From Ophelia neglecta (lineage: Eukaryota), in assembly GCA_965285935.1 (NCBI GenBank), contig OZ260661.1:82708001-82772000 (forward strand): 64,000 nt of DNA, written 5' to 3'. The notes under the pieces were generated by a model, which saw only the letters and a program-made list of their open reading frames with translations, was not told the origin of the DNA and ran no database searches. A program made the translations under genes and the position numbers. The first letter of the stretch is position 1. Each line of letters starts with the position of its first letter. Shown piece by piece: positions 38,930 through 64,000 of the stretch.

Positions 38930-41900
38930 ATGGCTGGTACGAAGTTAGCTTATCATCGCAATGTCATAGATGGTATGTCATATCAGAATCTTGTGAGGAA
39001 TATGGAAGAAAATGATGTGATCAGTAACCTGAATAATCAGAGCTTCGACAAGCGGGCAGAAGTATTGGAACAACTGAGGACTGCAGCTCGTAGAAATGGA
39101 GGTAGGCTTCCTTTCCCAGATCAACGCTCTATTTTTAATGGACTGTGTTCGTCACTCAATGACAGCAACTGGGACGTAAGGCACCAATGCATTCAGTTGA
39201 TACATGAGCTAATACCACAATTTGGGGAGGACTTGGATGAATGCATGTCAATAGTGTTGGAGCATTTAATTCCAAACATAGGAGACACTAAAATTACTGT
39301 TCGAAGAGCAGTGATACAAACCATACATGTTTATATGAAATATACATCGGACATTCATGGATTGTTTAAAGCAATTGTGTGGTATGGTCTGGAAAACCGC
39401 AATTCGCGAATCAAGAAGGAAATGGTAATATCATTGCCGATGGTTTTCACGCCAGAATTTTCTCAAGAGAATATGTTTGATATTACGCAAGCTTTAGCTA
39501 AGCGTCTACTGGAGAGTGATGGAGAGACAGGTAACGGCCTACAACAACATGCCCTCCTGTCATTGGAGAAGATCAGAAATCTGGTGGGGGATTCAACATT
39601 CAAAAGTTACTTGCAGAAGCTCTCCACCCCCCTGAGAAAATACTATTATCAGGTATCGGAGCATCAAGAAGAAATTAATTCAGAAAATAACAATAAGACC
39701 AGTTCAAAGCACAGTGCGTACAGCACACATTCTTCCCATTCCAATGGTCATATACGAGCTTTTGAGCCCTACCCAGATCCTCCACAACCTCAACCAAGAT
39801 CCAAGGAAACCATGATTCATTCAACAAACAATCTTGAGTTTGGAGTTGTTCCTGGTCATATCATGGACAAACTCAATGACCAGAGTAATTTCCGAGCCAG
39901 AGCACAGGGAGTGGAAGAGCTTAAACTGATTATTAAAGATCTTGACGATATAAGTGTGTTACATCCACAAATCTTGAACTTTATCAGTTTTCTTAATAAT
40001 CTGCTTGATGACTCAAACTTTAAAATTACTACAGTGACCCTAGAAATACTGGGAATACTAGTATCAAAGTTAAGCTTCAATGTACAGGATCATTTAAAAC
40101 CACTGGTTTTGGCATTATGTAAGCGGATGGGTGACAACAAAATAGTTGTCAGACAGGCCATAATGAAAGTAGCCATCCAGCTCATGCAGATCCTGTCTCC
40201 GAAAGAAGTACTGTCTGTCATTTGTGACAACCTATCCCATCGGAACTCTCGAGTTCGACAGGAGACACTGAACATAGTCATACGCTCCCTTCTTACTTTC
40301 CCAAGCTATGAATTTGATCTTGGAGAGCTATGCCAGAAAATTGCGCATACACTTATTGACCCCAAGAGGCAAGTGAGGCAGGCATCTTTAGAGTGTTTTT
40401 CTGTGTTGGCTCAGGCTATGGGAGCAGGCAAATTACAGCCGCTGGTACAGGCAGTAGACAGTGTAGAACTCAGTTATGATGGCGATGGAGTGATGGCTGC
40501 TGTGCAGTCCCGACTTGCTCGACGTCAGCTACCTCGGGTGAATGCTGACGGGCTCATTGATTACGCCACCCCAATACCGTCGTCAGCAGCATCAAGTCGA
40601 GGTTCTGTCCCTGCTGGTGCTGACATTGATTGGATCCTGCTGGCCTCTGGAAGCTCTGGATCAAGTGCACGCTCTGCTCGCTCTGATATGGAGCTTGAGA
40701 GTATAGCTTCAGGGTCGGCTAGATCCACCCCAGTACATATACCCGAGAGTCCTGCTCATACCCCGAGGAATAGTGGTAGACACCTGGCATCAGCTTCTAG
40801 GCGCTCAAAACTGCCTTGGGATGACAATGAGTTCAATCAGGTAAGAACTGAATAATTACTTTCAATTAGTTACATACTGTATATATTTCTGTTCCAAACA
40901 AGGAATTTAAACTTATATGATTTTCATAGATAAATTTAAAGCCAATCAAACATGTATTTTTGGTTCTTCGTCCATCGAGTTTCAAACAAAAATAGATATA
41001 TCTTTGAAAAAGATTTTTCTATCTGGAAATAAGATTTACATCAATATTTATTTTGCAGTCAAGCTTGTACACAAAACTTTTTTGTTTATGACGGTCGCAC
41101 CTAATATTACTCTTCTTCTGCTATGAACACGGTGATGGCGCACTTCTATCTAATACTGTAAGACATGAAATTTCTGTGCGCATGTCATTTTTGCCTTTCA
41201 ATTAATCAGTTGTATTGCGAGGATACTAGTAACCTGCCGCGAAAAACTGTGGACGCTTTTGTGCAATTTTCTGATGCTGCAGAAAGTTCATGTTTTACAT
41301 TCTGAATAATTACCAATATAAGCTTCTTTTGTGTCACAGTGTGCTGTCTATTGTGTATAAATCTCTGCACTTCCTCTTCTGTAGATATTACCACCACTTT
41401 CTGCATGTTAACAAGCTGTTCTTCCTGCCTCTCCTCTAGAACTTGTCCCCAAGACCGCTTTTGCACAGAAATACATATGAAGTAAAAGCCAAGCCACTAA
41501 AAGGTAGCAAACAGCCACTTTCTTACTTGGAAAAATGGAAGAGGCAGAGGCACCCAATCAAGAGTACTGAATCAAAGGTGCTGGCTACTAAGGCTCGCAG
41601 GAGCATCCTTGATTTGAGTTTTGGTGGTGAACAGGCAAAATTAAATTCCAGCATTGAAAACAGCCTGTGTGAAGAAGACGTTCCATCCTCACCACCAGAG
41701 AGTTCAAGGAGACTTTCACCACCCCCCTTGTCACATGACTCAGACAGAGAGATGGAGCGTCCACCATTACATGCTTCTGCAGATACAGCAGACTTGAGAT
41801 GTTTGATTAAACTTAAACATAATGACTTTAAACAAGATGTATTAATTAATCCAGGTGTCAGTTCTCCTACTCAAGATGATATGCCAGAGTACTCCCATTA

Positions 41901-44900
41901 TCCATCTGAGGTAGACCAAAAATATGTAGAAAAAAAACGGTCTCCAGCTTTTACTGGCAAAATGGACCTAATTACTGGTAATTTTCCACGCAAAGATGAA
42001 CCTTCCAGTTTAACACCAATACCAAAGACCGTCACACCTTTGAGTGGGTCCTCTTCGCGAAGTACAGCACTATCTCACTATGATACTTCAGGTGGGTGTT
42101 CAGACTGTAGTGGTACTCCCATGACAGATGAGTCGGTATCGACGAGTATATCTAATGCACTAGCACCTTTGTCACCTGCTATTCTTACCAGATCAAGATT
42201 ATCTCCTCTAGTCTCCCCCTTGAAATCAGCTGCCATTTCTCCAAATCAACCAGCCCATTTACCTCTTGTAAGATCACCAGGGGAAACAACTAGAATGCAT
42301 CTACAGCCAATGAATATGAAAAAACCACCAAGTCTACTGACTCCAAAGTCTCCAACCAAAAACACTCAATCCACATTGAGCTCTATAGAATGCATGGTGG
42401 ATGATGAACAGACTGCACCAGAGGCTTTGAAAATAAATAATTCTGTAGTGGTCTCAGCTAGAGGATCAACAGAATGCAATCAGAGTCCTTTAGGTAGGAT
42501 TGAAGAATTATCCGATCCACCTTCTGGGGATAAGCCTGAGCTATTATCAAAGGAACATTTCCAGGCAAAAGGTAAAATGAATTTCCCAATGAAGGCAAAA
42601 GCAGCTGAAATGTCTGAAGTAAAACACAAACTCCTGGTTGATGAAAACTCTGACTCTTCCAATAGATCTGCAATGTCTGAGACAATGATACCACCGCAGG
42701 CAGAGACTTGTGACCTTCAAACACCAGCAGTGGTCTGTAAACAGTCTAGTGTAAGAAGCTCAAACAAAAGGGTAACACCTACCAAAATGGCTCAAGCAAA
42801 AACATTTTCTGAAATAGGTCAAGAAAATAATGCAGTTTCTAGTAGCCCTTCTCCAATATCAACGAGGGAAACCGACACAAAGAAGGACAAAAGAAAATTG
42901 GCCTGCCATGAGGATAAAACCAAACAAAAAATGCAAAACAGAACTAAAAAAATTAAAATTGGCAATAAAATGTCACAAGATAAATCTTCCTTGACTACCA
43001 TTGGTCAAGAATTCAGTAACATGCCTGATTCATGCAATCAGAGTATAAAGCTCCCTAAAATTGGCCGAAATTTGTCCCGAAATTCGGATGATTTATCCAC
43101 AATATCTCAGAGTGATACATCTGGAAATGAACTGGTGAATACGTCTGCAGTTATGTCAGATAGGAAAGAAGGCGTTCGTTTCTCATTACCTGAACCACAG
43201 TCTGTACGACATGCTTTGGTTTCACCTGTGGAGCATACGACATCCACATCTCTAGAGGTAGCATCAAATTCTAGGAGATTCCCACTTTCCCCTGAAGAAA
43301 GCCCAGGCTCCCCTCATCTTAAAGAAACAAAAGAGAGTCCCTCTTCAAGCAAGATATGTGGGCAGTCCTCATTTGGACCATACTTGAAAGCTAGACTATA
43401 TAAGCAGTGTCCCCCAAACACAGATTCATTGGTTACTTTAATGGTTGGGAGGCCTTCAGCTTTCTCCAGAACATCTCTAGAAGACAGCCTAGACAACTGG
43501 GATGATGAGGCGGACTCACTGGGAAATCTGCCAGCTGAAGGTGTTGAGTCTGTCTCTGTTAAACCTGCTGTCTGTCTAGAACCTTGCTCTGCTGTGGTAA
43601 GCCGTAGGATAAGGAGCAATTAGCAAATAAGTTTTGTTACATTTTTGTTGTTTCATGGAAAAAGTGACAAGAATGTCCATAATAAAACTGGCCATATTGA
43701 AAAAAGTAGTAGCCCAATTTTTTTACCATGAACATTTACCTGTAAATTCAAGTGTTTTTAATCAAAGGAAATAGCTGCAGTCCCAATTGCCTCTGCAGTT
43801 TAAAGGTTACAATTTAAAGCTGTGAATAAGTCCCATGAATAAGGCTTAGATATGTAGATGAGATAATAGGCTAGAGACTGAAGAGAGCCTATGCTGTAGA
43901 TAAAATACTATGAGCCTTATCTTCTAATGTCATGAAAAAAACCCATATATATGTAATATTATGGATTATCAAATGTATCATCAAGTTGTTGGATTTTGGA
44001 CCAGCTTAAAGATATGCACTGATTGTTTGCTTTCATATCAACACAGTTACTAATAAACAGGGCCTCAAAGTAGACCTGTTGTCAGAGAGAGGGCACTTTT
44101 ATGTTTATCTAGAGGTAAAATTAAAAGTATGTACTTGGAGAAGTCATGAATTATTCTGTTACCATAAAGTGTAAATGATTTAAATAAGGAGGAGGAAAAA
44201 GGCCTAGAAAAACATGCATATTTAGTATATATATACATGTATGTGTGTTTTATACAAAGGTACATGTTCACAATATCTAATAACAGACGGAGGCTATTAC
44301 ATGTAGAAGCGTAGGTGGGCTGAATGGTGACTGAGGCATTTCAGAATAAATTCTTCATCAGAATCTGTGAATTTAGCCACTGGCCTTTAGATCTATTAAA
44401 TTTATTTGTAAAACACAGTACATATATTTGATGAAACAGTACATATAGGCGCAGAAGCTGCTAACTTGATGCTGATGGCAGCAGCAACTGAAATGTATTA
44501 AATGGCTGACCACATCGGCGAAGCTGGAACTCGGCAATCATACTTGTCTTCCCATACCTGTTAATTCCTCCCTACTCCTCCATACCCATGTCTGTCCTTA
44601 ATTTACCTAGCTTTACCTGTGCTCTCCTCTGTCTTTTTCCACACCAGGTGATAATCTTGTTAAGCAAAGACCTCTGTTATAAATGAGTCTTTTGATTCCT
44701 GCTTAAGGTAATATACACAATGCAGTGTGATCAATAACAGTTGGCTTGTGCAATTTGTTTTCATGGCCTGCATTCTGCATACTAGAAAACTGGTATGTGT
44801 GTTGTTATAAATTTATATTTTGCCCAATCTGCTCCACAAATAACTGTTACTGGTGAGGAGATTATGGCTGGTGCCCCACAAGGAGATTTCTGCTGGAATA

Positions 44901-47900
44901 CTCCTCCCCTCCCTCCTTCAGTACTATTTCTGCTTTTCATATTTAATCCAGCTCTTTTGCGGATCATGTTACCAAATACTTGGCTAATATCTGTATGCAA
45001 CATGGATGTGTAGCTGAAGGAAAATCAATATTGATCCTTCTGATGGCTTTGTCTCATTTTTTCACAGCTCAGTGATTCCCTTATGGACTATGTGCCTGTC
45101 TTTCTATTGTATTTTGCTCATCTAAATTAACTTCATACTGAATTTGATTATGCAGATAGCACACTATAATTTGTGCATAAGTTTGTAGCTGGATTGTTGA
45201 TTTTTGCTTAATTTGAAAAACGTCAAGTTATGTAAAATGGTGAATTTTAACACCAGTCATTTAAATCTCAATTCAGACATTTGGTCATGGCTGGAAACTT
45301 TTTTTTTGGTTGGATTTTCCCCATTACCCCAACAGGCATAGAGTCTTCTTTATAATAAATGTTATGTAGAAACACAGCCTAAACATCTACCAACCAAACA
45401 GAAAATCTACCCCCCCACGAGCAGGCGGGCTAGAGTTAATTTCCCTGTTTTATTCTAACTAATACAGAGCACTTATATTTATATCTAGAGATCATTGTTT
45501 GGTAAACATATATTCATGTCAGCATGTTAAGTAACATCTGTGCATGGCTTTAGTACAGCTTGTGATTTCTCATGCTACTTGTAGAACAGGAATTACCTTT
45601 AATTTTGTAAGTTTATTGCAGAAAATCTATAATTGTTTAATCAACTCCATTATTGACTTATGTTTATTAATAATTTTTCAGACATTTGGCAGTGAGAAGA
45701 AATCAAGCCGCAGAAGAAATAGAAGAGAAGATAGTCCCGAAGGAGGTAGGCAGTTATTAAATAAAAGCTGTTACTTTTTTTTCCTAAAAAAATATCTCGC
45801 AATGTCTTTATAACATTTGGATAATTATTCTGTGATTCCATTACCACATTGTTTTTGATAAATGTATTTTCAACTTCTAAGTTGTGGGCTATTTAGTGTA
45901 TTCCTCAACTATTTGGAGGTAAAGTGTTAACGGCTGATGAGATCAGTTGTTAGTTTACAATCCACTTAGTGCCGTTAACATGGTTTAACCCTTTCACAGC
46001 CACATTGCCAAAGAAACACTTGTGTTACTACCACATCCCTGGAATTTGCCGGAAAAATTTTCTTATGATTTTTATATTTATTAGAAAAGTTAGGATTGAA
46101 TTTTTTAATATATACCAAAAACGTATGAATTAGTGGTATTAATCTGTTGTTATCTTATAGTATCCTTATTAGAAATCAGTCTGGCAGTTGAGGTTGGGAT
46201 GATCTGGAGCAATATGGTAGTGAAAAGGTTAAGTGTTAATATTGCTTCCATTCAAGATTTTCTAAATGCCTGGTTTAGTTTATGTCTGAAAATGAAAACA
46301 AGTATGTGTCCCGGTCTACAAGCACATTTTGTGGACTCTATGTATAGAGGAACATGTTTTTTTTAGGAAAGTGTGCGCAAAACATATACTGTAACAGATA
46401 TTATTAAAAATAAGGAGCCCTGTTAGGCGCATACCATGGAATCCTTTAGGTTTAAAACAGCCTAAACAATGTAATGATTAAATTGGTCTTGAGGAAAATT
46501 TGGTTTGGCTAGTGTTGTTACTTAGAAACAGCATCCACATTAGGTCTGAATGAGAATCTCATTTACACCAATAGGTTTCTCCAGCACAATTGCTAAAAAA
46601 CTGTCATGGCCATGCAGGTCCTTAAAATGCATTTCATAAATGTTATGTTGGGATTTACTTGACACCAAGGAAAGCAATTCATGGTAACTTCTTGTCAGGG
46701 ACATGTTGTTCGCAATTTCTTTTCTCTTTTCACCTTTTCCACAAAGTGTCCGTTCGGGCGCTATGTACTTGTAATTAGTGTCATTACGGTTATTGTTTCT
46801 TTCGTTTGGAAATCCTATCATTTCCTGAACATATGTTTTAGAAGTATACAGCCATCAGCAAGGGCAGAAAGGAAAACAAAACTGTTAGTCCATGACTTGC
46901 TCTGGGATTTGCACCGAAGAATTGATCTGGCCAAAAGAGTAATTGTGGCAGGTATTGATCTGTCTTAAGACCTTCATAAATCTGCCAGCATATTGACAGA
47001 GCCTATAAAGCTCCCACAATAGGCCCCAGTGTACAGGCCATTGGATTCCAGGAGACATATAAAAAGTAGAACACATACAGCTTAGATCGATCGGCTCTGC
47101 CACCTATGACATATATAACTGCTTGCTTCCAATGCTTTTTTAATAGGCATTTGGATTAGTGCCATTATTGGTTGTAAAGGATACGATATGAACAACCATT
47201 AACGGGCTGCTGTCTATAAAGCTATTCCCTTATCAATCTGTTATGTTACTGGAGATCCTTTTATATACAGTTTGTTCACAAATTAAGGATAAATGTTTTG
47301 TCCATGAGCGCATATTTATCGATTGACAATGATGTTACAAGCCCTGTATTTCAATGGTGTTATAAGCATTCATGACAATAGTGTTACAAGTCTTGTATGT
47401 CATTCATGACCATGGTGTAATAAGTCCTATATCTTATAAGGCTTGAACTTCATTCATGACAATGGTGTTACAAGCCCTGAATTTCATTCATGACAATGGT
47501 GTAACTAGCCCTGAATTTCATTCATGACATTGGTGTAACAAGCCTTGTATTTCATTCTTGACAATGCTGTTACAAGCCCTGAATTTCATTTATGACATTG
47601 GTGAAACAAGCCTGGTATTTCAATCGTGACAATGGTGTTACAAGCCTTCTATTTCATTGATGACAATGGTGTTACAAGCCTTGTATTTCAATCATGACAA
47701 TGGTGTTACAAGCCATCTATTTCATTCATGACAATGGTGTTACAAGCCTTGTATTTCATTGATGACAATGGTGTTACGAACCTTGTATTTCATTCATAAC
47801 AATGGTGTTACGAGCCTTGTATTTCATTCATGACAATGGTGTTCCAAGCCTTGTATTTCATTCATAACAATGGTGTTACAAACCTTGTATATCATTCATA

Positions 47901-50900
47901 ACAATGGTGTTACAAACCTTGTATATCACTCATGACAATGGTGTTACAAGCCTTGTATTTCATTCATAACAATGGTGTTACAAGCCTTGTATTTTATTCA
48001 TGATAATGGTGTTAAAAGCCTCGTATTTCATTCATGACAATGGTGTTACGAGCCTTGTATTTCATTCATAACAATGGTGTTACAAGCCTTGTATTTCATT
48101 CATGACAATGGTGTTACAAACCTTGTAATTCATTCATGACAATGGTGTTACAAACCTTGTATTTCATTCATGACAATGGTGTTCCAAGCCTTGTATTTCA
48201 TTCATAACAATGGTGTTACAAACCTTGTATTTCATTCATAACAATGGTGTTACAAGCCTTGTATTTTATTCATGATAATGGTGTTAAAAGCCTCGTATTT
48301 CATTCATGACAATGGTGTTACGAGCCTTGTATTTCATTCATAACAATGGTGTTACACCCTTGTATTTCATTCATGACAATGGTGTTACAAGCCTTGTATT
48401 TCATTCATGACAATGGTGTTACAAACCTTGTATTTCATTCATAACAATGGTGTTACGAGCCTTGTATTTCATTCATCACAATGGTGTTCCAAGCCTTGTA
48501 TTTCATTCATGACAATGGTGTTACAAACCTTGTAATTCATTCATGACAATGGTGTTACAAACCTTGTATTTCATTCATGACAATGGTGTTACAAGCCTTG
48601 TATTTCATTCATAACAATGGTGTTACAAACCTTGTAATTCATTCATGACAATGGTGTTACAAACCTTGTATTTCATTCATGACAATGGTGTTACAAGCCT
48701 TGTATTTCATTCATAACAATGGTGTTACAAGCCTTGCATTTTATTCATGACAATGGTGTTACAGGCCTCGTATTTCATTCATGACAATAGTGTTATAAGC
48801 CTTGTATTTCATTCATGACAATGGTGTTATAAGCCTTGTTTTTTATTCAGGTTACCGAGATAAGCACTCTGGGAAACGAGACCGATCTGATCAGCCATTT
48901 AGTGTGTACACTCCAAAGGGAGATGATGGTAAGATAAATTAAAATGTCCTTTTTTAACAAAGCAGCGGTTCAGTTGCCTTTGATACTCTCTTCCAGATGA
49001 ATGTTTTGTTTCTTCATGGTCATTTGCTCTTCATTACCCGGTATAAAAAGAATTTTAGATTATATCAACAACAGAAAGTCTGGAGACCAGAAGTTTGATG
49101 AAAAATAAAGCAATGACAGGAAGCATTTCGCAGAAGACATTTGACTTCCAACCGTTTCGTTCCTTGTCCCTGCGCACAGCTGTATGTCTGTGGCTAGTCT
49201 TAGCTATAATCAGTGAGCCTCATAGCAGGGTGTTTGTTTCTTTTCAAATGTAGTTGAGGGAAAAATGGTTAAACAGGTTAGGAAAAAAGTATAGGTGCAA
49301 AAGCAGCTAAGGCTAAATATTTTGATGTCACTGCTAAAAGCAGAAAAATGTTTTTTGCATCAACATCAGATGTCTGGACCATTTTTATTACTTGCCCAAT
49401 GATCAGTCATGAATTTTATGAGTCTTGAGTAGAAGCAAGTTTAACCTGATTAATTGAGTACAGTGCTTATTTGCAAAGAGATCCCATGCAACAGATGCAT
49501 GATAATTTAGTTATCTGATGCTGAACTTATAAAATAATGGGAACAATAGACAATTATTGGAAGTCTGAATGCAGGTAAATATGGAAATTTGTGGCAAAAG
49601 CCAAAGACTACATTTAAAAGTGAAAGTGCAGGAGTTTAGCAATATCAAGTTGCCTTTTGGAGTTTGCCATGCAAAATGCTTTGATCCAATCTCAAATCCT
49701 AGACATGTCCTCAAGTTAGTCTAGCCAAGCATCACTTGTCTAGTCAGTCATTTGTCTGAAGCATGTGCATATTGAAGCTGTCAATTTTCAATGGATTAAT
49801 ATAGTCTTTATGCCAGTTTGTCTTTGCTTTGATCTCCAGGCTTTCTGTATTTGGTATAAGAAATTAAGCACTCTCATTCTTGGTTCTTTTCTTTAAAGTA
49901 GCCGTAAGCTTAGAAATATTGGGTTGTGGTAGTGAATTGAAGCAGGAGTCAGGTATTGAATTTACCCGGTACTTTTTATTAAAAACAAAAGTGACTTGGG
50001 TAATCAATGTTTCGGTGACAGAATCTTTCACTAGAATTATAAACCAGCCATTTTGAACATGGGTGGCTGTTGAATATGGGCTGATGGAAGCTGAAGGAGG
50101 CCAGGGAAATCATTGTACCATATTTCTTAAACCAATCCTGTCAGCACTTTCATTTTGAAAATATGCCCTGCAAATTTCTGGCAGATTTTGATGGCTAACT
50201 TTTTTTTCCGAATTAAAGAGAGCATGCAATAAAATGGTCTAGAAAATCTTATGACACAAAGGAGTTGACTGATTGGGTGTCATGTATGTGACATATGCCC
50301 CATTTTTAATACCTACCCTAGTCTGGTTTTAGTTTATCTTTCAAGTTCAGTGAATTGTTTTCAAGCAGTGTTTAATGACCTTATCATGTTGTCAGTATGT
50401 TTTATCACACCTTAAGAAAAAATGAAATTTCTCTTTACACTGTTTATGCTCCTTATGTTAATTTTTTTCACTGGCTTGCTTCCCTCAATCTATTTGCCAA
50501 CAACAGACCTGTGGTTTTAAACCTTTTTGCAGAAATAACTCTGCACGCATATGAGACTATATGTCTGCATTTGGCAAATAGGTTGGACTTAAAGCAGTGA
50601 ATGAACCTGTGTTTTAGTGTTGTTGTTAGTAGTATGATACTGTGTTGTAGGCCGTTCCTATTCCACCCCATCTTCAGGAGCCACTACACCTCGCTACGAT
50701 CATTACGATGACTCCAGCTATAAACGCATGCTCAATCCTATTGGAGGTATGAATCTATCTCAAACACAAACAACGTTTGCCAATAGTGATTTGTAAATAC
50801 TTAATTATTCATCAGAAGAAACCAGCTCTTCCAATTTAAGTCCAAAAAGGTCCTGTAAGCTGTTTGAATATATTACCCATATTGAGTTGTAAAAGTCTTT

Positions 50901-53900
50901 AGGTGAAGTTTGGATTCAATATTATTATACTTTAAATCCATAGCATTAAAATGTGAATCTATTACAAGTAACCACACTATTGGCAGACAGCACCTTGTTT
51001 AATTTATAATTTTTGTTTACTTCGAAATTCACTTTCTTCAGCATGGTAATGTCACACTTTCCAGACTGTGCTTTATTTGTACTTGGCTGATTTAAATAAA
51101 ACACTCAACCAAATGTACTCTTGGTTTGTGCAACAATTGCCTGTCAAGTTTCTAAATCTAGAAATGTAAAATTTTTAATATTATAATTGATATTTTTCAG
51201 CTTCCGACAGCACTGTTAGTTGGGATGATCCTTCTGGTGAGTCTTTTTAATGGTCTGGTTTCTATAGTAACAATGACCTTAAGCCTTGCACACACAAATT
51301 CCCTTCGATCATGCTGATGTACACATTAATGTCTATCATTACATGGAATACACCTAGTATATTATTTTGTTCGCATTGGTTGGTGCTATGAGTACTTTTT
51401 ATCAGTATGTTACCACAGTATGTCCTTTCCAAAGCTGTGGTGGATGAATTGATAACGTTAATGATGTGCAATTACCGAATGGTGTGATTTTTTTGGTCGT
51501 GTTTCGTTGCTCAGTTTGTTCGGTTACACATTCAGGAAAATCAATAAAAAATACAGATATTATCATGGACCTGATCTACTAGGCTATCGTTACATCTACT
51601 GACATGAAACTATCTCATATGCTAGGCTGGTTTGTTAGCTGCTCAACATGATATAAAATGCCAAGACATTGCACATTAAGCCTAATTCCTAATTCAATAG
51701 ATAAGATGAAAATAAATTGAAAATGATGACTGGTTCTGTGAATATATGAGATTTATTTGATTATCTTGAGTTTTGAAATTTAATTGCAAATATCATACCT
51801 CATGTTCTCTAGTGTAAGGCTGTTTAGAGATTATTGATTTTAAGGATACTGTCTATGCAATGCTTATGGTAAAGGGTATCACTTCAAGTGTGGCCTAACC
51901 CTACCAACAATGATAATAAGATCCGAAATTATCAGCAGTGCCCTTATTGTTTTATTTCTCAATTAATTGTAAAATAGTATGTCCCTGTTTTTCATTTTTA
52001 TCTATGTACAAATTGTATGTTTTACCAATTATTCAGGGCCAGCAGACAATGCCCCAATTCCGACCAAACCAATCAACATGGCTTCTCGGAACACCACATC
52101 CAAAATGAAGGTGCCTCCAATCACCGCAAGGCAGGACAGCTATGATTACATTGAGACTCCCAGAGATGATGAGGATGATTTCAGGGATGATGTATGAAAA
52201 TAATTATCATTTCATAAATTTTATTAGCACTTGAAAGACCACAATTTAGTCTCTTTTCTGGAACATTTTATGGTGAATGGATGTGTACAACTAACACACA
52301 AATATGATTGTTGTTGTACATTTAGACACTGTTCTAGTAAATTAAGTAATATGGACAAGTTTTAATTAACATACACATGCATATATGTTCTATTACAATA
52401 TTTAGGTAACAGGTGTAGAATTTTGTTCTCAATTTCTTCAATCCTTGCAGGTGCCTGATGCATATTCTATCAACAAAATCCGAAACAGTGCCACAAAGAA
52501 GAAGGTGGACCGGATTTTCAGCGAGATGTCCAGAGAACGCCTGACCGATGAAATGGACAGTGGTATATACAGTAAACAGACATCAAGGGAAGACACAATG
52601 GACTACCCAGATTCTAGTACCAGCTCTCAAAAAAAGTAAGTCAAAATTGTACTAAACAATTCTTATTTAATGGCTACTAATTATTTACAGACTCTAAACT
52701 TTGTGTGAACAATTGCCAAACATTCGTGTTGTAAATTACAAAAAACTTTCTGATTTCAATTTATAATGCTCTAAATCGTAAAAGTAATAAATGTCAGATG
52801 GGTTTACATTTCAAAAGTTGGTATTTACTTGGGCAAAGTCAAGGTCAATGAGGTGAAAAAGAATTACAGAGCATCAGAACAACTAAAATCACTGCCAAAA
52901 TGGTGACCCATGCAGTTATTACAATGAAAAGTCAAAAAGGTCTCAATTTTGTACATATGCAATCAGTTTCATTCTTAAATACTGGGTTGATTATATGGCC
53001 AAGAGGTGTTCCTCACAGAAGGCTAGGCCAAGGTGTTGTTTATATGTGTTACAAATTAATGGTATCCTTTTTTTTCAGGACTGCATCTGATAATCCATTT
53101 GGCAAGAAGCCTAAGCGAGTGGCTAGAAGTCTTCCTGGACAGTCACCTAAGTCAGAAACTCCTCCGTCCAGCTCATCCTCGGAACGTGATCAGATTCAGT
53201 TTCAGCCTATTGGTGGGGTCAGTTTCAGAGAAAACAAGAATGCTGATGTGGCTGTGGTTGGTAAGGGATACTCAGATGATAGTCATGCCAACGAGCCCAT
53301 CAAAACTACGTACCCAAACCAAAGGGCAAAGGACAGGAAGAAACTGGGAAACAAAGGTATACTTGCTAATCATATTTATCTTATTTTCTAGAGTATATTT
53401 TTTAAGGTTTTACCTGATTTGGTTGTGATGTTGTCACTTGCATTAGAGTTTTCTGTGAAGTTGTTTGTTTCTATGATTAGACCTGAACTTTAACTTTGAT
53501 ACACTTGTAAAACATGATACTTATTTTATGTTTAATATTTTGCTTGGTTGTGATTGGAAGTGAGGGACTTTTCTCTTGTTTGTGGTGATTTTTATCTATT
53601 GAAGTTTCAACTTACATTATTACTTGCACAATTTTTATATTGTTTCACCTGTTATTTCAAATCCTGTTTAAATAATTTCTATCCATAGAGCACCGTTTAT
53701 GCCTACTATGAACTCACAGAATTGTTAGTGCTGTTCTGCATGGTTTTCTTTGTGTGGTCACCTGTCTGTTGCACTCTTTCCAGCAGCCCTTTCTCCTCTT
53801 GGCATTGCCAACACCTCCAGCCCTGGTCAGCTTGAGCTGGACGATGAAAAGCTCCCCGAGGGCCTGGTTGGCAGAGGTAAGTTTTGTGCAGCATGCCTTC

Positions 53901-56900: not shown

Positions 56901-59900
56901 CCAACTTCCACTTCATCAAGTGTTTTGACCTATACGAACAGCCATACGGCTGTGGTAACCACAGGTACAATATTTGTGGATGTTTGTGTATTGTTCTGTG
57001 ATAAAAGTGTCCTATTATGGCCCAAGCTCACTTCATTGTGTTTGTCTAACTTAAGATGTGTTTGCTTTATGCCTCTGAAATAGTCCTGCATGGCTTGTGT
57101 TAACAGAGTTTTTTTTAAAAATAGACACAAAATGTCCACTTGCAATCATCTGTGACAGCAAATAAATATATCAAGAATGAATTCCAGGTAGGGCTCGGGA
57201 ACTCTCTGAAAACCAAATATCAGTCACCTCTAAACTTTGTTGAAAATCTTATTTGGGCACAACTTCTTGTGAGCAAGTTGTGTTGAAAACAATATATCAA
57301 ATGATTTAATATTATATTAGCTGCTCAGTGTTTAACATAGGGAAACTTTAATGCATTGTTCTAGTGTTTAATAATCTAATATTTAACTCTGTGGAATATG
57401 ATAATCTTGACATTTGATTACCTGAGGTTAATTAATATTTCTCTGCAATTTGGCTATGATATAATTCATACTCCCTTTTCTATGCTCGTACTAAATTGAT
57501 TTTCAGGTCATCCCTTCAGACATTTTTTAAGCACTCCTCGATATTTAAGTTGCTTGCCAAATTGACTCCATTTTTAGTCTGTTGATAAAGATGGATGAGT
57601 TGAGATTAAGATACTCTGCCTGCTTAAATAGACCTTGCCAAGCATTTATCTCATTTTATCGAGAGTTTAGACCGGGGCACCTAAGATGGCGTAGCTAGGA
57701 GTCTTCAGGTAGGATGAGAGTTAATGAAGAGGGTAAGGAGTTATACTTGTACCTGTGATCAGTTATAGATACACACAGGAAGTTAATGGAACACTCATAA
57801 GTTACATAAGGCACAGCCTGTCATTTACATATAGGTATCAAGAAAAATCTTTGTTTATTTCCAAACAAGTGTTGGAGCTGTACATATCTTAATATATGCA
57901 ACAGCTGGAATGAGAATTTACTCTATCTGTTTCTGTAGATAACGATTAACTGTTAATTTTCACAGGTATGTTTGATGCCTCGCCTGCCTCCAGTGATCAT
58001 TCTAGTTCAGGTCCTGGGCATTTACTACGGCCAGATCGTCGTACATCGCAGACTGAGGCCCCCAACCCCAGAAACCTACCTGGTGTCTTTGGAGTATCTG
58101 TTAAGAAGGATTCTTTTGACAAGACTGACGAGGAAGAAGAAGAAGATGTAAGTATAAAGACCAAGTTTTCTTTCCTCTAAACAAATTATTATTCCACTGG
58201 ATGTGATAAATATCTATAGTTGGATGGTCCCTGGAAAAAAAACATGAAGCTACTAGTGAAAAGTCTGGTAACTAGGTACAGTATTTTAAACTGTACAATG
58301 ATGAAATATGGAGTGATCACCAGGTCTCACATTAGCCAACTTCGGTTTGTGAACTCTTGGTACATACTCTTCTGGCTAACTGCCAAAACCTTCTGATTGA
58401 AGGTGGTAAATTTATGTGTGGTGTTGGTGGTAATATTCTGAAACAGTTCTTTCTGGCGAGTCTATACAATAAATGAATAATTAAACCCTGCCTCATTGAA
58501 ACTTATTTTTACTTCTACTATAAAATAAACTGTATTGCAATTGTCAATATCAAGTCTCAAACTCACCGTAGGTAATAAGGTGGTCATTCATCAAGCTAGT
58601 TTTATTAGTTGGTTTCTCTTTCGGAGGCTACGGGACAGACAGACATGAGTGATGAAGGGGCTGGCTTGCCACTTGCTTACACTCTTAAGGTGTAAATGCT
58701 AGAATGAAAAGCAAAGACATTTCAGACTCCAAGCCAAACTCTAACCCTGTATCACTTCAGACTCCTGACCCTTAACTCTAACCCTTACTCTGTCCTTGCA
58801 TCATTTCAGACCCTAACTCTAACCTTTACCTGTATCATTTCAGACCCTAACTCTAACCTTTACCTGTATCATTTCAGACCCTAACTCTAACCCTGTACTC
58901 TAACCCTAACCCCTAACTCTAGTCATGTATCATCACACCACTGACCTCTATATTATTTACTTTATTTAGAAATAGATACTGGAACTTGCTTTTCACTGAA
59001 ATATACTTCAATATCATAGCTCAAAGTGCCTAGTTGCTAGTGCTATGTACAGTAAAACCCTTTAATTTCACTGCCCTCAAATTAACGTTCTCATTTGGCA
59101 CAAATTATTTCACTGCCCTTTATTGTTGTGTTTTAGGGAGAGATCCACTACAAATACTCACCGGGCCTCCTCTTTACATGAGGCTTTTATTTTCAGGTTT
59201 TTGACCCTACTCGTGAAATTCTACGAATTGAGGGCTTGGCTAATGTTAGAGTTTTACGATAGTGTTTTTATTTAGTCAACTTTGCTGTTTTACAAGTGTA
59301 TATGGACCTGACTGTTGATGCTATGTTACCTGACTGTACAAGTGCCATTAACATGGAAATAACAAGTTTGGAAGAAACAGCATTTAAAATGTCAGTGGTT
59401 GAATCTTTCTGGATTCAAAATCAATAAAGGAAACTCTTGTTGATTGAAGTCTCCCGAGATGCCATGCTTGCCATATTTGAAGCCCACCAATTGGAATCAA
59501 GCCATCAAGAATTCTTGGCTTGATATACACACATAATGAATAAAACAATATGTGAATAATTTGCAACCAAGTTAGTGTTTATGTCTGTATCTAAAACACT
59601 GTGTCATGACCATGTATATGTACAAGCCCTTGTGGTGAAGCAATCAACAGGGAGTGCAGAAAACACTCCAACATGCCACATGATTGTTAGCCTGACACAG
59701 AGGGGGGACACAGGAAAGGTGTATAATTGTGCCCTGATATCAATATGGCTTTCAGTTGAAAGTGTATATGAAAACGTCTATAGCTGTAGTCCTTCTCTGA
59801 ATTGCCTGCAATAAACATGCATGTATAGTCTTCTCTAACTAATTGAGTTTATTGTTTCCGTTGGCCATTGTGATTAAATTGTTACTTGTTAAAAGCAATT

Positions 59901-62900
59901 AAACTTATAACCCAGTCCATGCATGACTTGTCTGCTTAGGAATAGAGAGACTAATGGGATAATAATCAAATTAACCGTGTCAGGGCTTGCCCCCTCCAAC
60001 CCCCCCCCCCCTCCCTCACACACATACTGTTGAGCTGCCTCCTCGGCAGTCAGCACTACTTCATTGCCCACTGCTCATGCTTCATGCGTTTACCGAGGTG
60101 GCGGCTCTGTGTTGATTTAGCTATAGGTGCATACTGTCCCAGTCAATGTTTATTGTATCCATTGAACTGCCACTGTCCACAAACGGTGACCCCTGCTCCA
60201 ATGGTGTACTGTCTCACACACTTATATTTGTGAATATGCATGGAAACATGTCGCCAACAAAAAAAGTGTTGTGTCTGCCACATAAACAGGACAAACTGGT
60301 GTAGTTTAAGGAATACTTGAACACTAATTCATGGCGAGACATTTTAACGTTTGATGAAGAAAGCATTCAACAGTTTCTGATGTTGATGATCATGACCATG
60401 AAGAGGTTGAACTGGGTTAATCGTGTGTCAGAAACGGAGATTTAGCGACACTGTGTCCACATTGTGGTGTTAGTATCCAGTCAGCTCATGGGGGCAGGCT
60501 GTACAAAATGTCAGGTAACCAGCATCATTTTGAATACTAGTACATCAAGTTTGTGTGTAGTTCAAGTACGTTTAGTTAGTTTAAACATATTTATTCTGGG
60601 TCCTAATAACCAACGCTAATCAAGAGGTTTAGTTCATTTAGGGCAAAGGTGGCAGCTAGGTTTGTCAGTGAATGGTGACACACGTGTACAATCATGTAAA
60701 TTATATGACCTTTATTCGTATCAGGGCATAAACATCCAGAGGAGAAATTTATGCTCTCAATATGTGCATATCTTATCAATAAGTTTATTAAGTTGGTGAA
60801 TTATGATGTAAAATATGAAGGCTTATTAAGAATAAGTTGGTGATGAATGTGCTTAATTTTTTTATGTGATGATTAAGAGTTTCTTGGTACCTTTAGTTTT
60901 ATGTAAAGGAGTCCATCCACTAGACAGAGACATATTTATTACCACCACAATGGTTGTAAATAGCCATGGTGTACAGATATCTTTGAGTATTGAGTGATAA
61001 ATACATTTATGAGCTGATAACTATTACTCTGACATGTATATTTGTACTATAATTTGTAAGTACTGTACTGTGTTTGTAGATTAAAAATAGTATAATCAGT
61101 ACCTTGAGAAATAGAAAATAATGTATTTATCAGAACACTGTGTGACTATGTAACTTCAGAAGTTAAGTTATTTTTTTCACCAAGATTTCTAGTCTTTTTA
61201 TATGCATAATTGTACTTAGGATTTAAGTCGTTATGATTGCTTTAATGGTAAAGTACTTTAACTAGACTAAGAGTGTGCAAGTCCATTATCTGTCATTAAA
61301 TTTGACACTCTACAAGCTGATCAAGAGAGTGAATTGAGCTTTTTTTTGATAAAAAGCTGGCTATACAAACCCTGTTTTATCAAGTCACAGATGGCTCGGT
61401 ACAGAGCTAGGAGGGTTGAATATTCTTCGTTCCTGGTATCTACCGGTATTTAAAAAATGATTATCAGTAGATATAAAACAAAACTTTCAGGTCATTTTGC
61501 TATCATATATCACCAGTGTCTTGGATAAATTTTTGATAGTGTATCAAGTCCTAGGACTGTGTCAGGTTGCGTATAAGCCAGGGTACACAAAGAGTTTATT
61601 TTCCCTTGCTGAATCCTAGCAATAGCATGACTTTTGTTTGTGATTTTGACAGTTACTAGCAACCACGCTATTTAGTAACTTGAATGAATTTAACCCTTTT
61701 CGTCATGGATATATGTATCTTATAGAAATTAATGATGATTTAGGTAGTTTCCAGCTGAAAAAGTGTTAAACTTAATTGTTTCTTAATTTATTGACCCCAT
61801 TTAAACTTAATTATGTAGCCCCTTCACTCATGTGCCACACTAAGAGTCTTATATGCAAAATACTGGACGTTCATCTTGTAAGAAAGATGATACAAATACT
61901 TGCATGTTCCTTTCAAAATGTACTCAATATTCAACATTTAATTTTAATTAATCAAGCTCCCCTGAAATTATATTTTTATATTTTAAATATATATATTCCA
62001 AATTATTCAAGTGCTTTGAGAAGGAAGGCCAATTTTTTTCTTATTAGTTTTGACCGATTCTTTACCAAACATTCGAAATTGATTTGCTTTGTAGTGAAAA
62101 GGTTAACAATAGTTTTTTTTTTAACCAGATCAGATAGATCTGATCAGAATGCATTCTCTCATGATTTGTATTGACATGTGGCAGCTGAGTGAGCTGAAGT
62201 GTCTTGATGTTATCTTGATCAGCTATCTCAAGTCTCTGGATGTGTTTAAAAGATTTATACTGCACAGTAGACCTATCATAAATTGTCTTGTACAGTATTG
62301 TACCCAAATTACTTATGATTAAGCTTAAATCAACTTTTTAAAGCATCTAAAATCATAATTATTATGCGTAATTATTTACACATTAATAGACATATTCCCT
62401 TAGAACTTCTGTACAAGTAGTATGGGGGAATGATGTAAAAAAAAGTGACAGAAGAAGCAGAAAGTGTTATCTTCTAATTAGGGACCTTGACATCCTTTTC
62501 AAGGTCAAATTGAGCAAACAGACTTCAATGTAATATTTTTGCTTAACAGTGCTAGATAGGCATATAAAATGTGATTAAACACAAAATAGGAAGTTATATT
62601 CAAGGAACCAGATGCAGCCTATGAATTTGACTTTGCCCTCTTTTCAAGGTCAAATTAAGAAAATAGATTCTTCAACACAAAACACTTGCTTCACCTTGCT
62701 AGATAAGAACACAAAATGCATTGACCACAAATAAAAAGTCCCTGTTTAAAGACTAAAGATGACATTCAAATTGATCTTTAATTCTTTTTTTTTTCATGTT
62801 ATTAGGCAGAATATTTATCCATTCATTTCAGATATTCATTCATTCATTCAAGATAATATTGCGCAGAATGCCTACTTCGCACATGCATAGATATTGCATG

Positions 62901-63698
62901 AGGGAAAAATCTTTTTGCACCTAACATTTTTAATTAAAATTATGTTTTTCCTCCTTTCACATGTCGTTGTTTCTGTGAGACACATATCAGGGTTACCCTG
63001 TCTAGTTTTGTCTCGGTGAAACTTGTCAGACCTAGACATACCAGTAAGTCAATTAAGTCAATATGGCTTCGAGTGTGATGGGCATAATATGTATTGTAAG
63101 ATATTTGAATCAGCGATTTTGTGTTCAAAGAGCGTGTAAATAAAATATAAGTGAATATAAAGTTGGATTTATTGATGAATGTCACTTGTTCTAGTCACCA
63201 TTCCCGTTGGATAGGATAACCACACAGCTGTGAATGATAAACCTGCTAACCCAGTATTATTTTAAGCAGCAACAACAGACTGGCATCCCAGGAAGTCATG
63301 GAAAGAAGATTATAAATTTAGATGGATATACATGCAAATGAATGCTTACGCTTATGATTTTTTTGTAATGCTAATTTTCTTTCTACCATAAGGTCATTAT
63401 GTATGTGCATGCATGAATGTAAACACCTAGAGACAAATAAGTGTTGCTTGACAATCAGTTGTGTTGTTTATATTACAGAATGCAAGCATATCAATGTCCC
63501 GTGCTACCCGGGAACAAATGCAGAAGAAAATACAGGCAAAGAAAGAAGAAGAAGCAAAAAAACGAGAAGATGAAAGAAGAGATAGGGAACGAAGAGAAAA
63601 GGAAGCAGAAAGACAGAGACAGGAAAGGATAAAAGAAGAGAAAGAGCGCCAACAGGAGAAACTAAGACAGCTGAGTACAGCTGACAATGGACTAGATA
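38930..63698 (+). CDS. TOGARAM1: TOG array regulator of axonemal microtubules (TOGARAM1/FAM179B/crescerin), 5' part; the gene continues beyond the window
   Basis: Exon 38930-40840 encodes two HEAT/TOG domains (LNDSNWDVRHQCIQL; FEFGVVP-like LEFGVVP, RAQGVEELK, LLDDSNFKI, SRVRQETLN, RQVRQASLECF, AVQSRLARRQLP). Further in-phase exons: 45682-45745, 48851-48928, 50651(or 50678)-50746, 51201-51236, 52037-52191, 52451-52635 (IRNSATKKK), 53079-53356, 53784-53876 (LVGRG), 57966-58147, 63479-63698 (ISMSRATREQMQKK). Confidence 0.88.
41440..43596 (+). CDS. TOGARAM1: Giant in-frame exon of TOGARAM1 (719 codons, Ser/Pro/Thr/Lys-rich, probably disordered); cassette or alternative terminal exon (stop at 43621-43623)
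   Basis: Strong acceptor cttcctgcctctcctctag| at 41439 in phase 0 with exon 1; open for over 2.1 kb; donor GTG|GTAAGC at 43596 (phase 0); AATAAA at 43681. Confidence 0.65.
44690..45010 (+). mobile_element. Degraded LINE RT fragment
   Basis: AGAPQGDF...VLFLLFIF resembles the RT motif SGVPQGSxLGPxLFLxFIND. Confidence 0.4.
45989..46228. mobile_element. piggyBac-type MITE (240 bp)
   Basis: TTAA at 45985-45988 and 46229-46232; imperfect TIRs ccctttcacagcca / tggtagtgaaaagg. A similar right end (gtagtgaaaaggttaa) occurs at 62091-62106. Confidence 0.6.
47313..48850. repeat. 34-bp minisatellite, ~45 copies, consensus atttcattcatgacaatggtgttacaagccttgt
   Basis: Head-to-tail units without spacers (period 34, e.g. 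47821 to 47855); diverged at the 5' end; ends at the acceptor of exon 48851. Confidence 0.97.
58716..58930. repeat. Short tandem array (34-bp unit tcatttcagaccctaactctaacctttacctgta) with CCCTAA/CTCTAA telomere-like hexamers
   Basis: Two exact units from 58801, a partial third, and degenerate flanking units ending in taaccctaacccctaactct. Confidence 0.75.
59050..59259. mobile_element. Degenerate TA-flanked Tc1/mariner-type MITE
   Basis: ta|cagtaaaacc...gccctcaaatt versus aattgagggc...gagttttacga|ta. Confidence 0.45.
60488..60514 (+). CDS. TOGARAM1: Candidate alternative first coding exon of TOGARAM1 (MGAGCTKCQ)
   Basis: ATG at 60488 with an in-frame upstream stop at 60443-60445; donor CAG|GTAACC at 60514 in phase 0, matching the phase-0 acceptor at 63478; peptide fits MGxxx[S/T]K. 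Confidence 0.5.
62480..62780. repeat. Remnant of a gaccttga/tcaaggtcaa repeat family; similar motifs at ~11030-11100 and ~52835-52850
   Basis: Two ~145-bp diverged units, each with gac(c/t)ttg...cttttcaaggtcaaatt and gctagata. Confidence 0.45.
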
Positions 63699-64000
63699 GT
63701 AAGTCAAGAGCTACTAGAAAACCAACAACATAAAAATGATAGTATTGTGAGTTTATGGCCTTTTTAGTTGACATTGAAGGCAATATTAGCTAACATGGAG
63801 ACATTCATGATCAGTTAGATGTTTTGTATGGTGTTTGACATATTCAAGATGTCAGACTCTGTGTGATCCAAGTTAGTTAACAGTAAAACTCGTCTGGCTT
63901 GTAACTACGGAGAATTTCCTTCACAAGCAAGTCATCTAGAGATCTAAGATTGATTGGAGTTAAATTAAGTGCTGATTGGTCAGCAGCACAACAAAGTGAT

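What the first reader, a model, noticed from the sequence alone, without database searches (positions are those of the whole stretch)
60234..63698. Hidden internal first exon predicts a myristoylated/palmitoylated short crescerin (TOGARAM1) isoform
Seen: deep in the 5.3-kb intron, ATG GGG GCA GGC TGT ACA AAA TGT CAG|GTAACC (60488-60514) encodes MGAGCTKCQ and ends in a phase-0 donor matching the phase-0 acceptor of exon 63479. An in-frame stop lies just upstream (60443), there is no good polypyrimidine tract, and an RFX half-site (atggaaac, 60240-60247) and a forkhead core (taaaca, 60283) lie upstream. Established: MGxxx[S/T]K is the N-myristoyltransferase consensus; nearby cysteines are typical palmitoylation sites; dual acylation targets proteins to the ciliary membrane; crescerin C-terminal TOG domains bind the microtubule lattice. 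Inference: an internal ciliary promoter makes a membrane-anchored isoform lacking TOG1-2 that could link axonemal microtubules to the ciliary membrane. I know of no description of such an isoform.
Basis: partly seen in the sequence, partly recalled or inferred. Interest (0 to 1): 0.85.

Follow-up and report, generated by a model that had tools for sequence, protein, structure and literature searches.

The report
Possible lipid-anchored short crescerin first exon
A 27-base ATG-to-splice-donor stretch inside an intron of this animal's only crescerin (TOGARAM1) gene could start a short, fat-anchored version of this cilium microtubule regulator; similar starts in worm and mollusc gene models make it plausible, but no RNA data exist to prove it.

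Summary
The sequence is exactly as described. ATG GGG GCA GGC TGT ACA AAA TGT CAG|GTAACC lies at 60488-60514 in the 5,331-nt phase-0 intron (58148-63478) of a single-copy crescerin/TOGARAM1 gene. An in-frame TAG sits at 60443.

The promoter argument fails: the X-box-like site and the forkhead core occur at chance frequency. No RNA run exists for this organism, so the junction cannot be tested.

Taken alone the motif is weak: about 2% of random 5.3-kb introns carry one (0.6% with a cysteine).

Comparison with other species gave unexpected support:
- The Capitella teleta gene model for the TOG3-4 half starts with a 27-nt, phase-0 exon, MGGLLCGDK. It lies in the orthologous 5.2-kb intron and joins the same downstream exon.
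- Short isoform models in three molluscs (Crassostrea, Mytilus, Haliotis) share an alternative first exon with MG(I/L/V)xCSxS, in a different linker intron.
- MGxxC[ST] occurs nowhere else in the 240 crescerin-family proteins I collected.

Against it, the orthologous introns of Paralvinella, Lingula, Crassostrea and Patella hold no such exon. The Kozak context and the donor are mediocre.

Verdict: the reading is partly supported. I put the exon being real at about 45%. Acylation and a ciliary role remain inference.

The parts
38930..40852 (+). First coding exon of the crescerin/TOGARAM1 gene (TOG1-TOG2). The proposed short isoform would lack it.
   Evidence: Pfam hits: HEAT, CLASP_N, CEP104-like_TOG, XMAP215_CLASP_TOG. 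It is 52-61% identical to the exon 1 products of Lingula, Capitella and two unnamed assemblies.
57966..58147 (+). Canonical linker exon upstream of the intron. It ends ...GAA GAA GAT|GTAAGT in phase 0.
   Evidence: Sequence. Homologous to Lingula residues 1134-1187 and to the Capitella 'GMFDPSG...' open frame.
58148..63478 (+). 5,331-nt phase-0 intron that holds the candidate exon.
   Evidence: The orthologous intron is 5.2 kb in Capitella, 5.7 kb in Patella, 2.1 kb in Paralvinella, 293 nt in Lingula and 242 nt in Crassostrea.
60240..60288 (+).
   Evidence: Both are present, at chance frequency. They are not evidence of a promoter.
60443..60445 (+). In-frame TAG, 15 codons before the ATG.
   Evidence: It also ends a small upstream open frame that begins at the ATGs of 60392-60400.
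60488..60514 (+). Candidate alternative first coding exon, MGAGCTKCQ (27 nt, phase 0).
   Evidence: It is the only ATG-GG start in the 36-kb gene that has an N-myristoylation consensus, a nearby Cys and an in-frame donor. Same size, phase and intron as the Capitella MGGLLCGDK exon.
60515..60520 (+). Donor GTAACC. With the preceding CAG it gives 7 contiguous matches to CAG|GTAAGT; positions +5 and +6 are off consensus.
   Evidence: The gene's real donors read here are GTAAGT, GTAAGT, GTAAGC and GTATGA.
63479..63698 (+). Canonical exon NASISMSRATREQ... (K/E-rich coil), with a phase-0 acceptor after a good pyrimidine tract. It would be the second exon of the short isoform.
   Evidence: Homologous to Lingula ESVISMSKTTKE, Capitella EPISMAPTTKE and Paralvinella DVGSIAISKTTKE at the same exon boundary.

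Best explanation
Window 60488-60514 is an alternative first coding exon of the animal's single crescerin (TOGARAM1) gene. On this reading, an internal start site within roughly 90 nt upstream gives an mRNA that splices 60514 to 63479. Its product lacks TOG1-TOG2 and most of the linker. It keeps the K/E-rich coil, TOG3 and TOG4, and begins MGAGCTK.

After removal of Met1, Gly2 would be N-myristoylated (small residue at position 3, Thr6, Lys7) and Cys5 and/or Cys8 S-palmitoylated. That would place a microtubule-rescue module on a membrane.

Shown here: the sequence anatomy, the frame compatibility, the single-copy gene, and the parallels in Capitella and mollusc models.

Inferred: transcription and splicing in this animal, the acylation, and any ciliary localisation.
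For: (1) The anatomy is right and unique within the gene. It is the only in-frame N-myristoylation-consensus start with a Cys in 36 kb.

(2) Capitella teleta model CAPTEDRAFT_186424 (691 aa, TOG3-4 only) starts with ATG GGA GGA TTG TTG TGC GGT GAT AAG|GTGGGT at L010:10001-10027. That exon is also 27 nt and phase 0. It lies inside the orthologous 5.2-kb phase-0 intron and joins the orthologous exon (EPISMAPTTKE). That model was made without regard to acylation motifs. I estimate about 1% for such a start by chance.

(3) Short isoform models share an alternative first exon with the core MGxxCSxS: Crassostrea angulata X6 (MTFGDV-MGILCSVSA), Mytilus californianus X18 (MTFGDG-MGLVCSSSN) and Haliotis rufescens X5 (...-MGVGCSNS). 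The residues before MG are not shared between Haliotis and the bivalves. In Crassostrea the exon lies in a linker intron at L013:13543-13588. MGxxC[ST] occurs only in these three among 240 crescerin-family proteins with 5,634 Met.

(4) Given that motif class beforehand, an in-frame match in the gene's roughly 28 kb of introns is expected about 0.005 times for the strict form. For the loose form, scaling one search gives about 0.03.

(5) The genome has one crescerin locus and no TOGARAM2-like paralogue. Any TOG3-4-only product must therefore come from this gene.

(6) Linker plus TOG3-TOG4 is enough for microtubule binding and rescue in vitro, and TOG1-2 are dispensable for rescue (PMC12170345).
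Against: - No RNA evidence of any kind: the only runs holding the stretch are DNA contigs of one sample.
- The exon is absent from the orthologous intron of Paralvinella (the best-scoring named relative in the C-terminal exons), Lingula, Crassostrea and Patella. It is therefore not broadly conserved.
- The mollusc exon sits in a different intron.
- The Capitella exon comes from an automatic gene model that split the gene in two and may be ab initio.
- In the bivalve models the annotated start is an upstream in-frame ATG, six codons before MG. If that ATG is used, Gly is not N-terminal.
- Kozak context is weak (C at -3) and the donor is off consensus at +5 and +6.
- CpG observed/expected is 0.42-0.54 at the site, against 0.8-1.3 at the main promoter and a gene-body median of 0.31. 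The Crassostrea alternative exon has no CpG peak either, so this point is weak.
- Chance look-alikes do occur: Patella MGSCPTF has no donor and Paralvinella MGCVRWK is out of frame.
Confidence: 0.45

Rival explanations
1. Chance open frame. The ATG-to-GT string is ordinary intron sequence that happens to read MGAGCTKCQ. It is never used as an exon. The Capitella start is an invention of the gene predictor, and the mollusc exon is an unrelated lineage-specific feature.
For: - About 2% of random introns of this size hold such a string (0.6% with Cys), so hundreds are expected genome-wide.
- The promoter motifs are at chance.
- No RNA data exist.
- Four relatives lack an in-frame MG exon in the orthologous intron.
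- Kozak context and donor are mediocre.
- Chance look-alikes were seen in Patella and Paralvinella.
Against: This reading needs two coincidences. First, the independently built Capitella model would by chance have the same kind of start, the same size and the same phase in the same intron. Second, the gene family would by chance be one whose mollusc short isoforms carry a conserved MGxxCSxS first exon found nowhere else in 240 family members. It is also the only in-frame candidate in the whole gene.
Confidence: 0.42
2. An internal promoter exists in this intron, but the short product starts at the conserved Met inside exon 63479 (NASISM, ATG at 63494-63496). It would be a TOG3-4 isoform without any lipid anchor, and the MG string would be irrelevant.
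For: - The Patella vulgata RefSeq model XP_055957389.1 (631 aa) starts at exactly this Met.
- The Met is conserved in Lingula and Capitella.
- TOG3-4-only products without MG starts are modelled in several animals.
- The orthologous intron is large (5-6 kb) in Patella, Capitella and this animal.
Against: The Patella model may simply be a truncated annotation, since the P. caerulea protein of the same cluster has 1,733 aa. Paralvinella lacks this Met. No RNA data exist here.
Confidence: 0.08
3. Internal cassette exon 60446-60514. It is 69 nt, in frame and free of stops, and would be inserted between exons 58147 and 63479 of the full-length mRNA.
For: AG at 60444-60445. The 69 nt read RHCVHIVVLVSSQLMGAGCTKCQ and keep the frame.
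Against: There is no pyrimidine tract before 60446, where the sequence is purine-rich. None of the 240 homologues collected has an insert at this junction.
Confidence: 0.03

Closest known systems
Capitella teleta CAPTEDRAFT_186424 (691-aa TOG3-4 gene model)
   Same: Its first coding exon is 27 nt and phase 0, starts MG with a nearby Cys (MGGLLCGDK), lies inside the orthologous phase-0 intron of about 5.2 kb, and is spliced to the orthologous ...ISM... exon.
   Different: The peptides share only M, G and a Cys (Cys6 there, Cys5/Cys8 here). There is no nucleotide similarity between the introns. The Capitella exon has a strong Kozak context and donor and a CpG-richer kilobase upstream. It is an automatic model whose evidence I could not inspect.
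Mollusc TOGARAM1-like short isoform models (Crassostrea angulata X6 XP_052701993.1, Mytilus californianus X18 XP_052097643.1, Haliotis rufescens X5)
   Same: An internal alternative first exon gives a product without TOG1-2. From the MG, 8-9 codons are encoded, with the core MGxxC(S/T); Haliotis MGVGCS compares with MGAGCT here.
   Different: The exon lies in an earlier linker intron, so the products have about 1,000 aa rather than about 700. That part of the linker is inside the giant exon 2 here. The annotated start in these models is an upstream in-frame ATG. In Crassostrea the donor is phase 1.
Vertebrate TOGARAM2 / Crescerin2 (FAM179A)
   Same: A crescerin with only the TOG3-4-like pair (PMC4642858). 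The proposed isoform would be its functional counterpart in an animal with a single crescerin gene.
   Different: It is a separate gene, not an isoform. The one TOGARAM2 N-terminus seen here (Tamandua, MGTRDD...) does not fit the N-myristoylation consensus at position 6.
Dual-acylated N-termini made by alternative first exons (Src-family kinases such as Fyn; sperm hexokinase HK1S)
   Same: MG...C N-terminus. Myristate plus palmitate gives stable membrane binding (PMC2132482). An isoform-specific N-terminus redirects an otherwise soluble protein to a membrane (PMC4736023).
   Different: These proteins are unrelated. Acylation of any crescerin has not been reported in the papers searched.

Membership tests
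Crescerin / TOGARAM1 | [quoted passage not shown] | tested here: met
   Exon 38930-40852 hits the HEAT, CLASP_N, CEP104-like_TOG and XMAP215_CLASP_TOG profiles. It is 52% identical to Lingula TOGARAM1.
Crescerin / TOGARAM1 | Long linker followed by a C-terminal TOG3-TOG4 pair in the same gene | tested here: met
   Exons downstream of the window (L002) match TOG3-4 of Paralvinella, Lingula, Capitella and oysters at 40-76% identity.
Alternative first exon (internal promoter) | Open frame from ATG to a donor whose phase matches the next exon, with a stop upstream and no usable acceptor | tested here: met
Alternative first exon (internal promoter) | Transcript 5' ends and a splice junction seen in RNA | not testable with these tools
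   No RNA run holds the stretch. The three runs found are DNA contigs of one sample.
Alternative first exon (internal promoter) | Conservation of the exon in the orthologous intron of relatives | tested here: inconclusive
   Present in the Capitella model. Absent in Paralvinella, Lingula, Crassostrea and Patella. The nearest assemblies (59-61% identity in exon 1) could not be reached by walking.
N-myristoylated / palmitoylated proteins | Gly2; small uncharged residue 3; Ser/Thr/small residue 6; no Pro7 (PROSITE PS00008, from my own knowledge); Cys within the first residues for S-acylation | tested here: met
   M-G-A-G-C-T-K-C: Gly2, Ala3, Thr6, Lys7, Cys5 and Cys8. This is a sequence match only.
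N-myristoylated / palmitoylated proteins | Lipid actually attached; membrane localisation lost in G2A or Cys-to-Ser mutants | not testable with these tools
   Needs metabolic labelling and imaging.
RFX (X-box) driven ciliary promoter | 14-nt X-box GTHNYYATRRNAAC close to the start site | tested here: not met
   60234-60247 matches with 2 mismatches. There are 163 such matches in the window against 179 +/- 18 expected.

The most novel reading that the evidence does not exclude
Spiralian animals with a single crescerin gene make, from internal promoters, a TOG3-TOG4-only isoform whose first exon encodes a myristoylation/palmitoylation signal (MGxxC[S/T]). The exon sits in one linker intron in molluscs and in a later intron in Capitella and in this animal. 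The product would be a membrane-anchored microtubule-rescue factor, a lipid-tethered counterpart of vertebrate TOGARAM2, that could couple axonemal or cortical microtubule ends to the membrane.
Probability: 0.3. Interest if true: 0.8.

Novelty: new variant of a known kind. Interest (0 to 1): 0.55.

Why it matters
Crescerin/TOGARAM1 is a Joubert-syndrome protein that controls growth of axonemal microtubules at the ciliary tip. All described forms are soluble and reach microtubules through the TOG domains, the linker and partners such as ARMC9 and CEP104.

A lipid-anchored form holding only the rescue-competent TOG3-4 module would be a new way to connect the membrane to microtubule ends. It would also suggest what TOG3-4-only crescerins (vertebrate TOGARAM2) are for.

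The recurrence of an MGxxC(S/T) first exon in models from three molluscs and an annelid makes the idea testable now in species that have RNA data and genetics, such as oyster, mussel, abalone and Capitella. This holds whatever the outcome for this window.

Tried and rejected
- RNA evidence. The look-up of sequencing runs gave only three runs of one sample. These hold 81-85% of a mostly intronic stretch. Laid on the stretch they are unspliced DNA contigs, so they confirm the letters and nothing about expression.
- Repeat origin. The stretch is single copy.
- Bacterial-type promoter scan. It is irrelevant for an animal gene.
- Homologue search with the open frame of exon 63479. No hit.
- Walking along the two nearest assemblies (L007+L011, L008+L014).
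- Look-ups of the short mollusc isoforms P0170 and P0157. They are not on record because only the longest product of a gene is kept. The Crassostrea locus was reached through isoform X1 instead.
- Nucleotide alignment of this intron with the Capitella and Paralvinella introns. Only noise.
- CpG observed/expected as a promoter mark. Only a small bump at the site. The Crassostrea alternative exon shows none either, so the measure does not discriminate.
- Other MG starts in the gene. 49537 (MGTIDNY...) has a phase-2 donor against a phase-1 acceptor. 68068 (MGNATTS...) runs into the next canonical exon. 71438 has no donor.
- Branchiostoma MGCAMVV, Ostrea MGHLDQ and MGVIDY, and Tamandua TOGARAM2 MGTRDD do not fit the N-myristoylation consensus, so I did not count them.
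Exons were searched one by one by reference.
Full report
**What is in the sequence**

The window carries a crescerin/TOGARAM1 gene on the + strand.
- Exon 1 (38930-40852) encodes TOG1-TOG2.
- A giant linker exon follows at about 41440-43596, then several small linker exons.
- The TOG3-TOG4 exons lie beyond the window end, in L002; the stop is at extended coordinate about 74099.

The finding lies in the intron between exon 57966-58147 (ends GAT|GTAAGT, phase 0) and exon 63479-63698 (starts AAT GCA AGC = NAS, phase 0). The intron is 5,331 nt.

At 60488-60514 the sequence reads ATG GGG GCA GGC TGT ACA AAA TGT CAG, followed by GTAACC. An in-frame TAG sits at 60443-60445. The bases before 60446 are purine-rich, so an acceptor there is unlikely.

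The stretch is single copy. The contigs of three DNA runs from one sample list no difference between 60221 and 60732.

**Is it more than chance on its own?**

Not convincingly.
- The intron holds 141 ATG...|GT phase-0 strings, 6 of them with a donor as good as this one.
- In random Markov-1 introns of the same size, 1.9% contain an N-myristoylation-consensus start with an in-phase donor, and 0.6% also have a Cys.
- For the narrower pattern MGxxC[ST] with an in-phase donor the rate was about 0.17 per Mb. This comes from one hit in 6 Mb and is therefore rough.
- A 762-Mb genome should hold hundreds of such strings.

- The X-box-like site is a 2-mismatch match, of which the window has 163 against 179 +/- 18 expected.
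- TAAACA occurs 6 times in 3.5 kb against 5.3 expected.
- A start site near those motifs would place six or more ATGs in the leader. Only the last 87 nt before 60488 are free of ATG.
- CpG observed/expected rises only to 0.42-0.54. The gene-body median is 0.31 and the main promoter reaches 0.8-1.3.

**RNA**

No RNA run holds the stretch. The three runs found are one sample's DNA. Laid on 57900-63800 they are unspliced contigs. The decisive junction test could not be done.

**Relatives**

The representative search with exon 1 found two unnamed assemblies as nearest (59-61% identity). Among named species it found Lingula, freshwater mussels, amphioxus and snails. In the C-terminal exons the annelid Paralvinella scores best. 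The animal is therefore a spiralian without a close sequenced relative in these collections.

The orthologous intron was identified by the conserved flanking exons (...GMFD...acidic | ...ISM/IAIS-KTTKE...).

| Species | Orthologous intron | In-frame MG exon? |
|---|---|---|
| Lingula | 293 nt | none |
| Crassostrea | 242 nt | none |
| Paralvinella | 2.1 kb | no ATGGG start with a phase-0 GT |
| Patella vulgata | 5.7 kb | MGSCPTF... present but without any phase-0 donor |
| Capitella teleta | 5.2 kb | yes, see below |

A Paralvinella MGCVRWK string in the next intron is out of frame.

**Capitella**

The Capitella gene was split by the annotators into an N-terminal model and a 691-aa C-terminal model, CAPTEDRAFT_186424. 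The first exon of the C-terminal model is ATG GGA GGA TTG TTG TGC GGT GAT AAG|GTGGGT at L010:10001-10027.

That exon matches the claimed architecture here:
- 27 nt and phase 0;
- peptide MGGLLCGDK;
- 3.4 kb into the intron;
- spliced to the orthologous exon EPISMAPTTKE.

The kilobase upstream of it is CpG-richer than the rest of that intron.

The model was built without regard to lipidation. Allowing for a predictor's liking for G at +4, I estimate about 1% for such a start by chance. That figure is my own arithmetic, not a tool result.

**Short isoforms elsewhere**

Searches with the TOG3-4 half returned many N-terminally truncated models. Three of them share an alternative first exon:
- Crassostrea angulata X6: MTFGDV-MGILCSVSA
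- Mytilus californianus X18: MTFGDG-MGLVCSSSN
- Haliotis rufescens X5: ...LLLQPL-MGVGCSNS

Each is spliced to the homologous linker exon. Only the part from MG onward is shared between the abalone and the bivalves.

In Crassostrea the exon lies in a 2.75-kb linker intron at L013:13543-13588. Among all 240 crescerin-family proteins collected (5,634 Met), MGxxC[ST] occurs only in these three.

The peptide here, MGAGCT, fits that core, and the coding length from the MG is the same (8-9 codons). In this animal the corresponding linker segment is inside the giant exon 2.

An unnamed intronless 624-aa TOG3-4 protein from three assemblies starts MGKGVSY.

**Context**
- The genome has a single crescerin locus. 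Vertebrates have a separate TOG3-4-only gene, TOGARAM2 (PMC4642858).
- In vitro, linker plus TOG3-4 binds microtubules and causes rescues. TOG1-2 are dispensable for rescue, and TOG2 binds ARMC9 (PMC12170345).
- A short isoform would therefore plausibly be active and independent of ARMC9.
- No paper found describes an acylated crescerin.

**Weighing**

Against the exon:
- no RNA;
- four of five examined relatives lack it at this intron;
- weak Kozak context and a +5/+6 off-consensus donor;
- the site was selected for its motif;
- chance look-alikes exist;
- the Capitella exon may be ab initio, and the bivalve models start at an upstream ATG.

For the exon:
- it is the only frame-compatible candidate in the gene;
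- an independent model in another spiralian has the same construction in the same intron;
- the gene family demonstrably carries a conserved MGxxCS alternative first exon in molluscs.

If the motif class is taken as given beforehand, an in-frame match in this gene is a 0.5-3% event.

I put the exon being real at about 45% and pure chance at about 42%. The rest goes to an unlipidated internal start at the conserved Met of exon 63479 (as in the Patella model) or to a cassette exon.

Acylation follows from the consensus if the exon is translated from this ATG. The ciliary-membrane role is speculation.

Noticed in passing
L002:5500-6500 (= 69500-70500 counted on from the window start; outside the window): A CpG-island-like kilobase (CpG observed/expected 0.9-1.4 against a gene-body median of 0.31) lies in the intron after the first TOG3 exon. 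It holds a 220-nt tandem duplication (L002:5749-5968 and 5970-6189, 95% alike). No tRNA and no Rfam family match. It could be another unmethylated internal element or promoter.
   Followed up: partly
window 51258-51271: A perfect, palindromic match to the X-box consensus (GTTTCTATAGTAAC) lies in the intron about 0.75 kb upstream of the 'PIPTKP' linker exon (from about 52037). That is the region where short isoform models of other animals begin. Roughly 0.7 perfect matches are expected per window by my own arithmetic, so it may be chance. A second perfect match is at 18229-18242, in another gene.
   Followed up: no
window 43596-52037: The giant exon 2 ends in phase 0 (GCT GTG|GTAAGC), but the next recognisable exon (GG CCA GCA GAC...) needs one base from the previous exon. 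At least one small unrecognised exon must therefore lie in this 8.4-kb interval.
   Followed up: no
window 59870-60066 and 62431-62824: Summed contig depth rises 4-fold and 10-30-fold in the DNA runs, with many loose ends. These are repeated elements inside the intron, the first only about 420 nt upstream of the candidate ATG.
   Followed up: no
L009:17711-20128 and L009:20348-22754 (Lingula anatina): Six consecutive TOG3-region exons of Lingula TOGARAM1 match two adjacent places equally well. This is a tandem duplication of about 2.6 kb in the gene, or an assembly artefact.
   Followed up: no
P0190, P0229, P0230 (unnamed ENA assemblies): A 624-aa TOG3-4-only protein, called as one uninterrupted open frame, starts MGKGVSY (Gly2, Ser6). 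It may be a stand-alone short crescerin with a possible N-myristoylation signal, in an unidentified eukaryote.
   Followed up: no
L010:1016-2863 and L010:10001-14501 (Capitella teleta); L012:1-2357 and 5001-28841 (Paralvinella): In both annelid annotations the crescerin gene is split into an N-terminal and a C-terminal model. Unannotated linker exons are visible between the two Capitella models (open frames at L010:5271-6004 and 6439-6621).
   Followed up: partly
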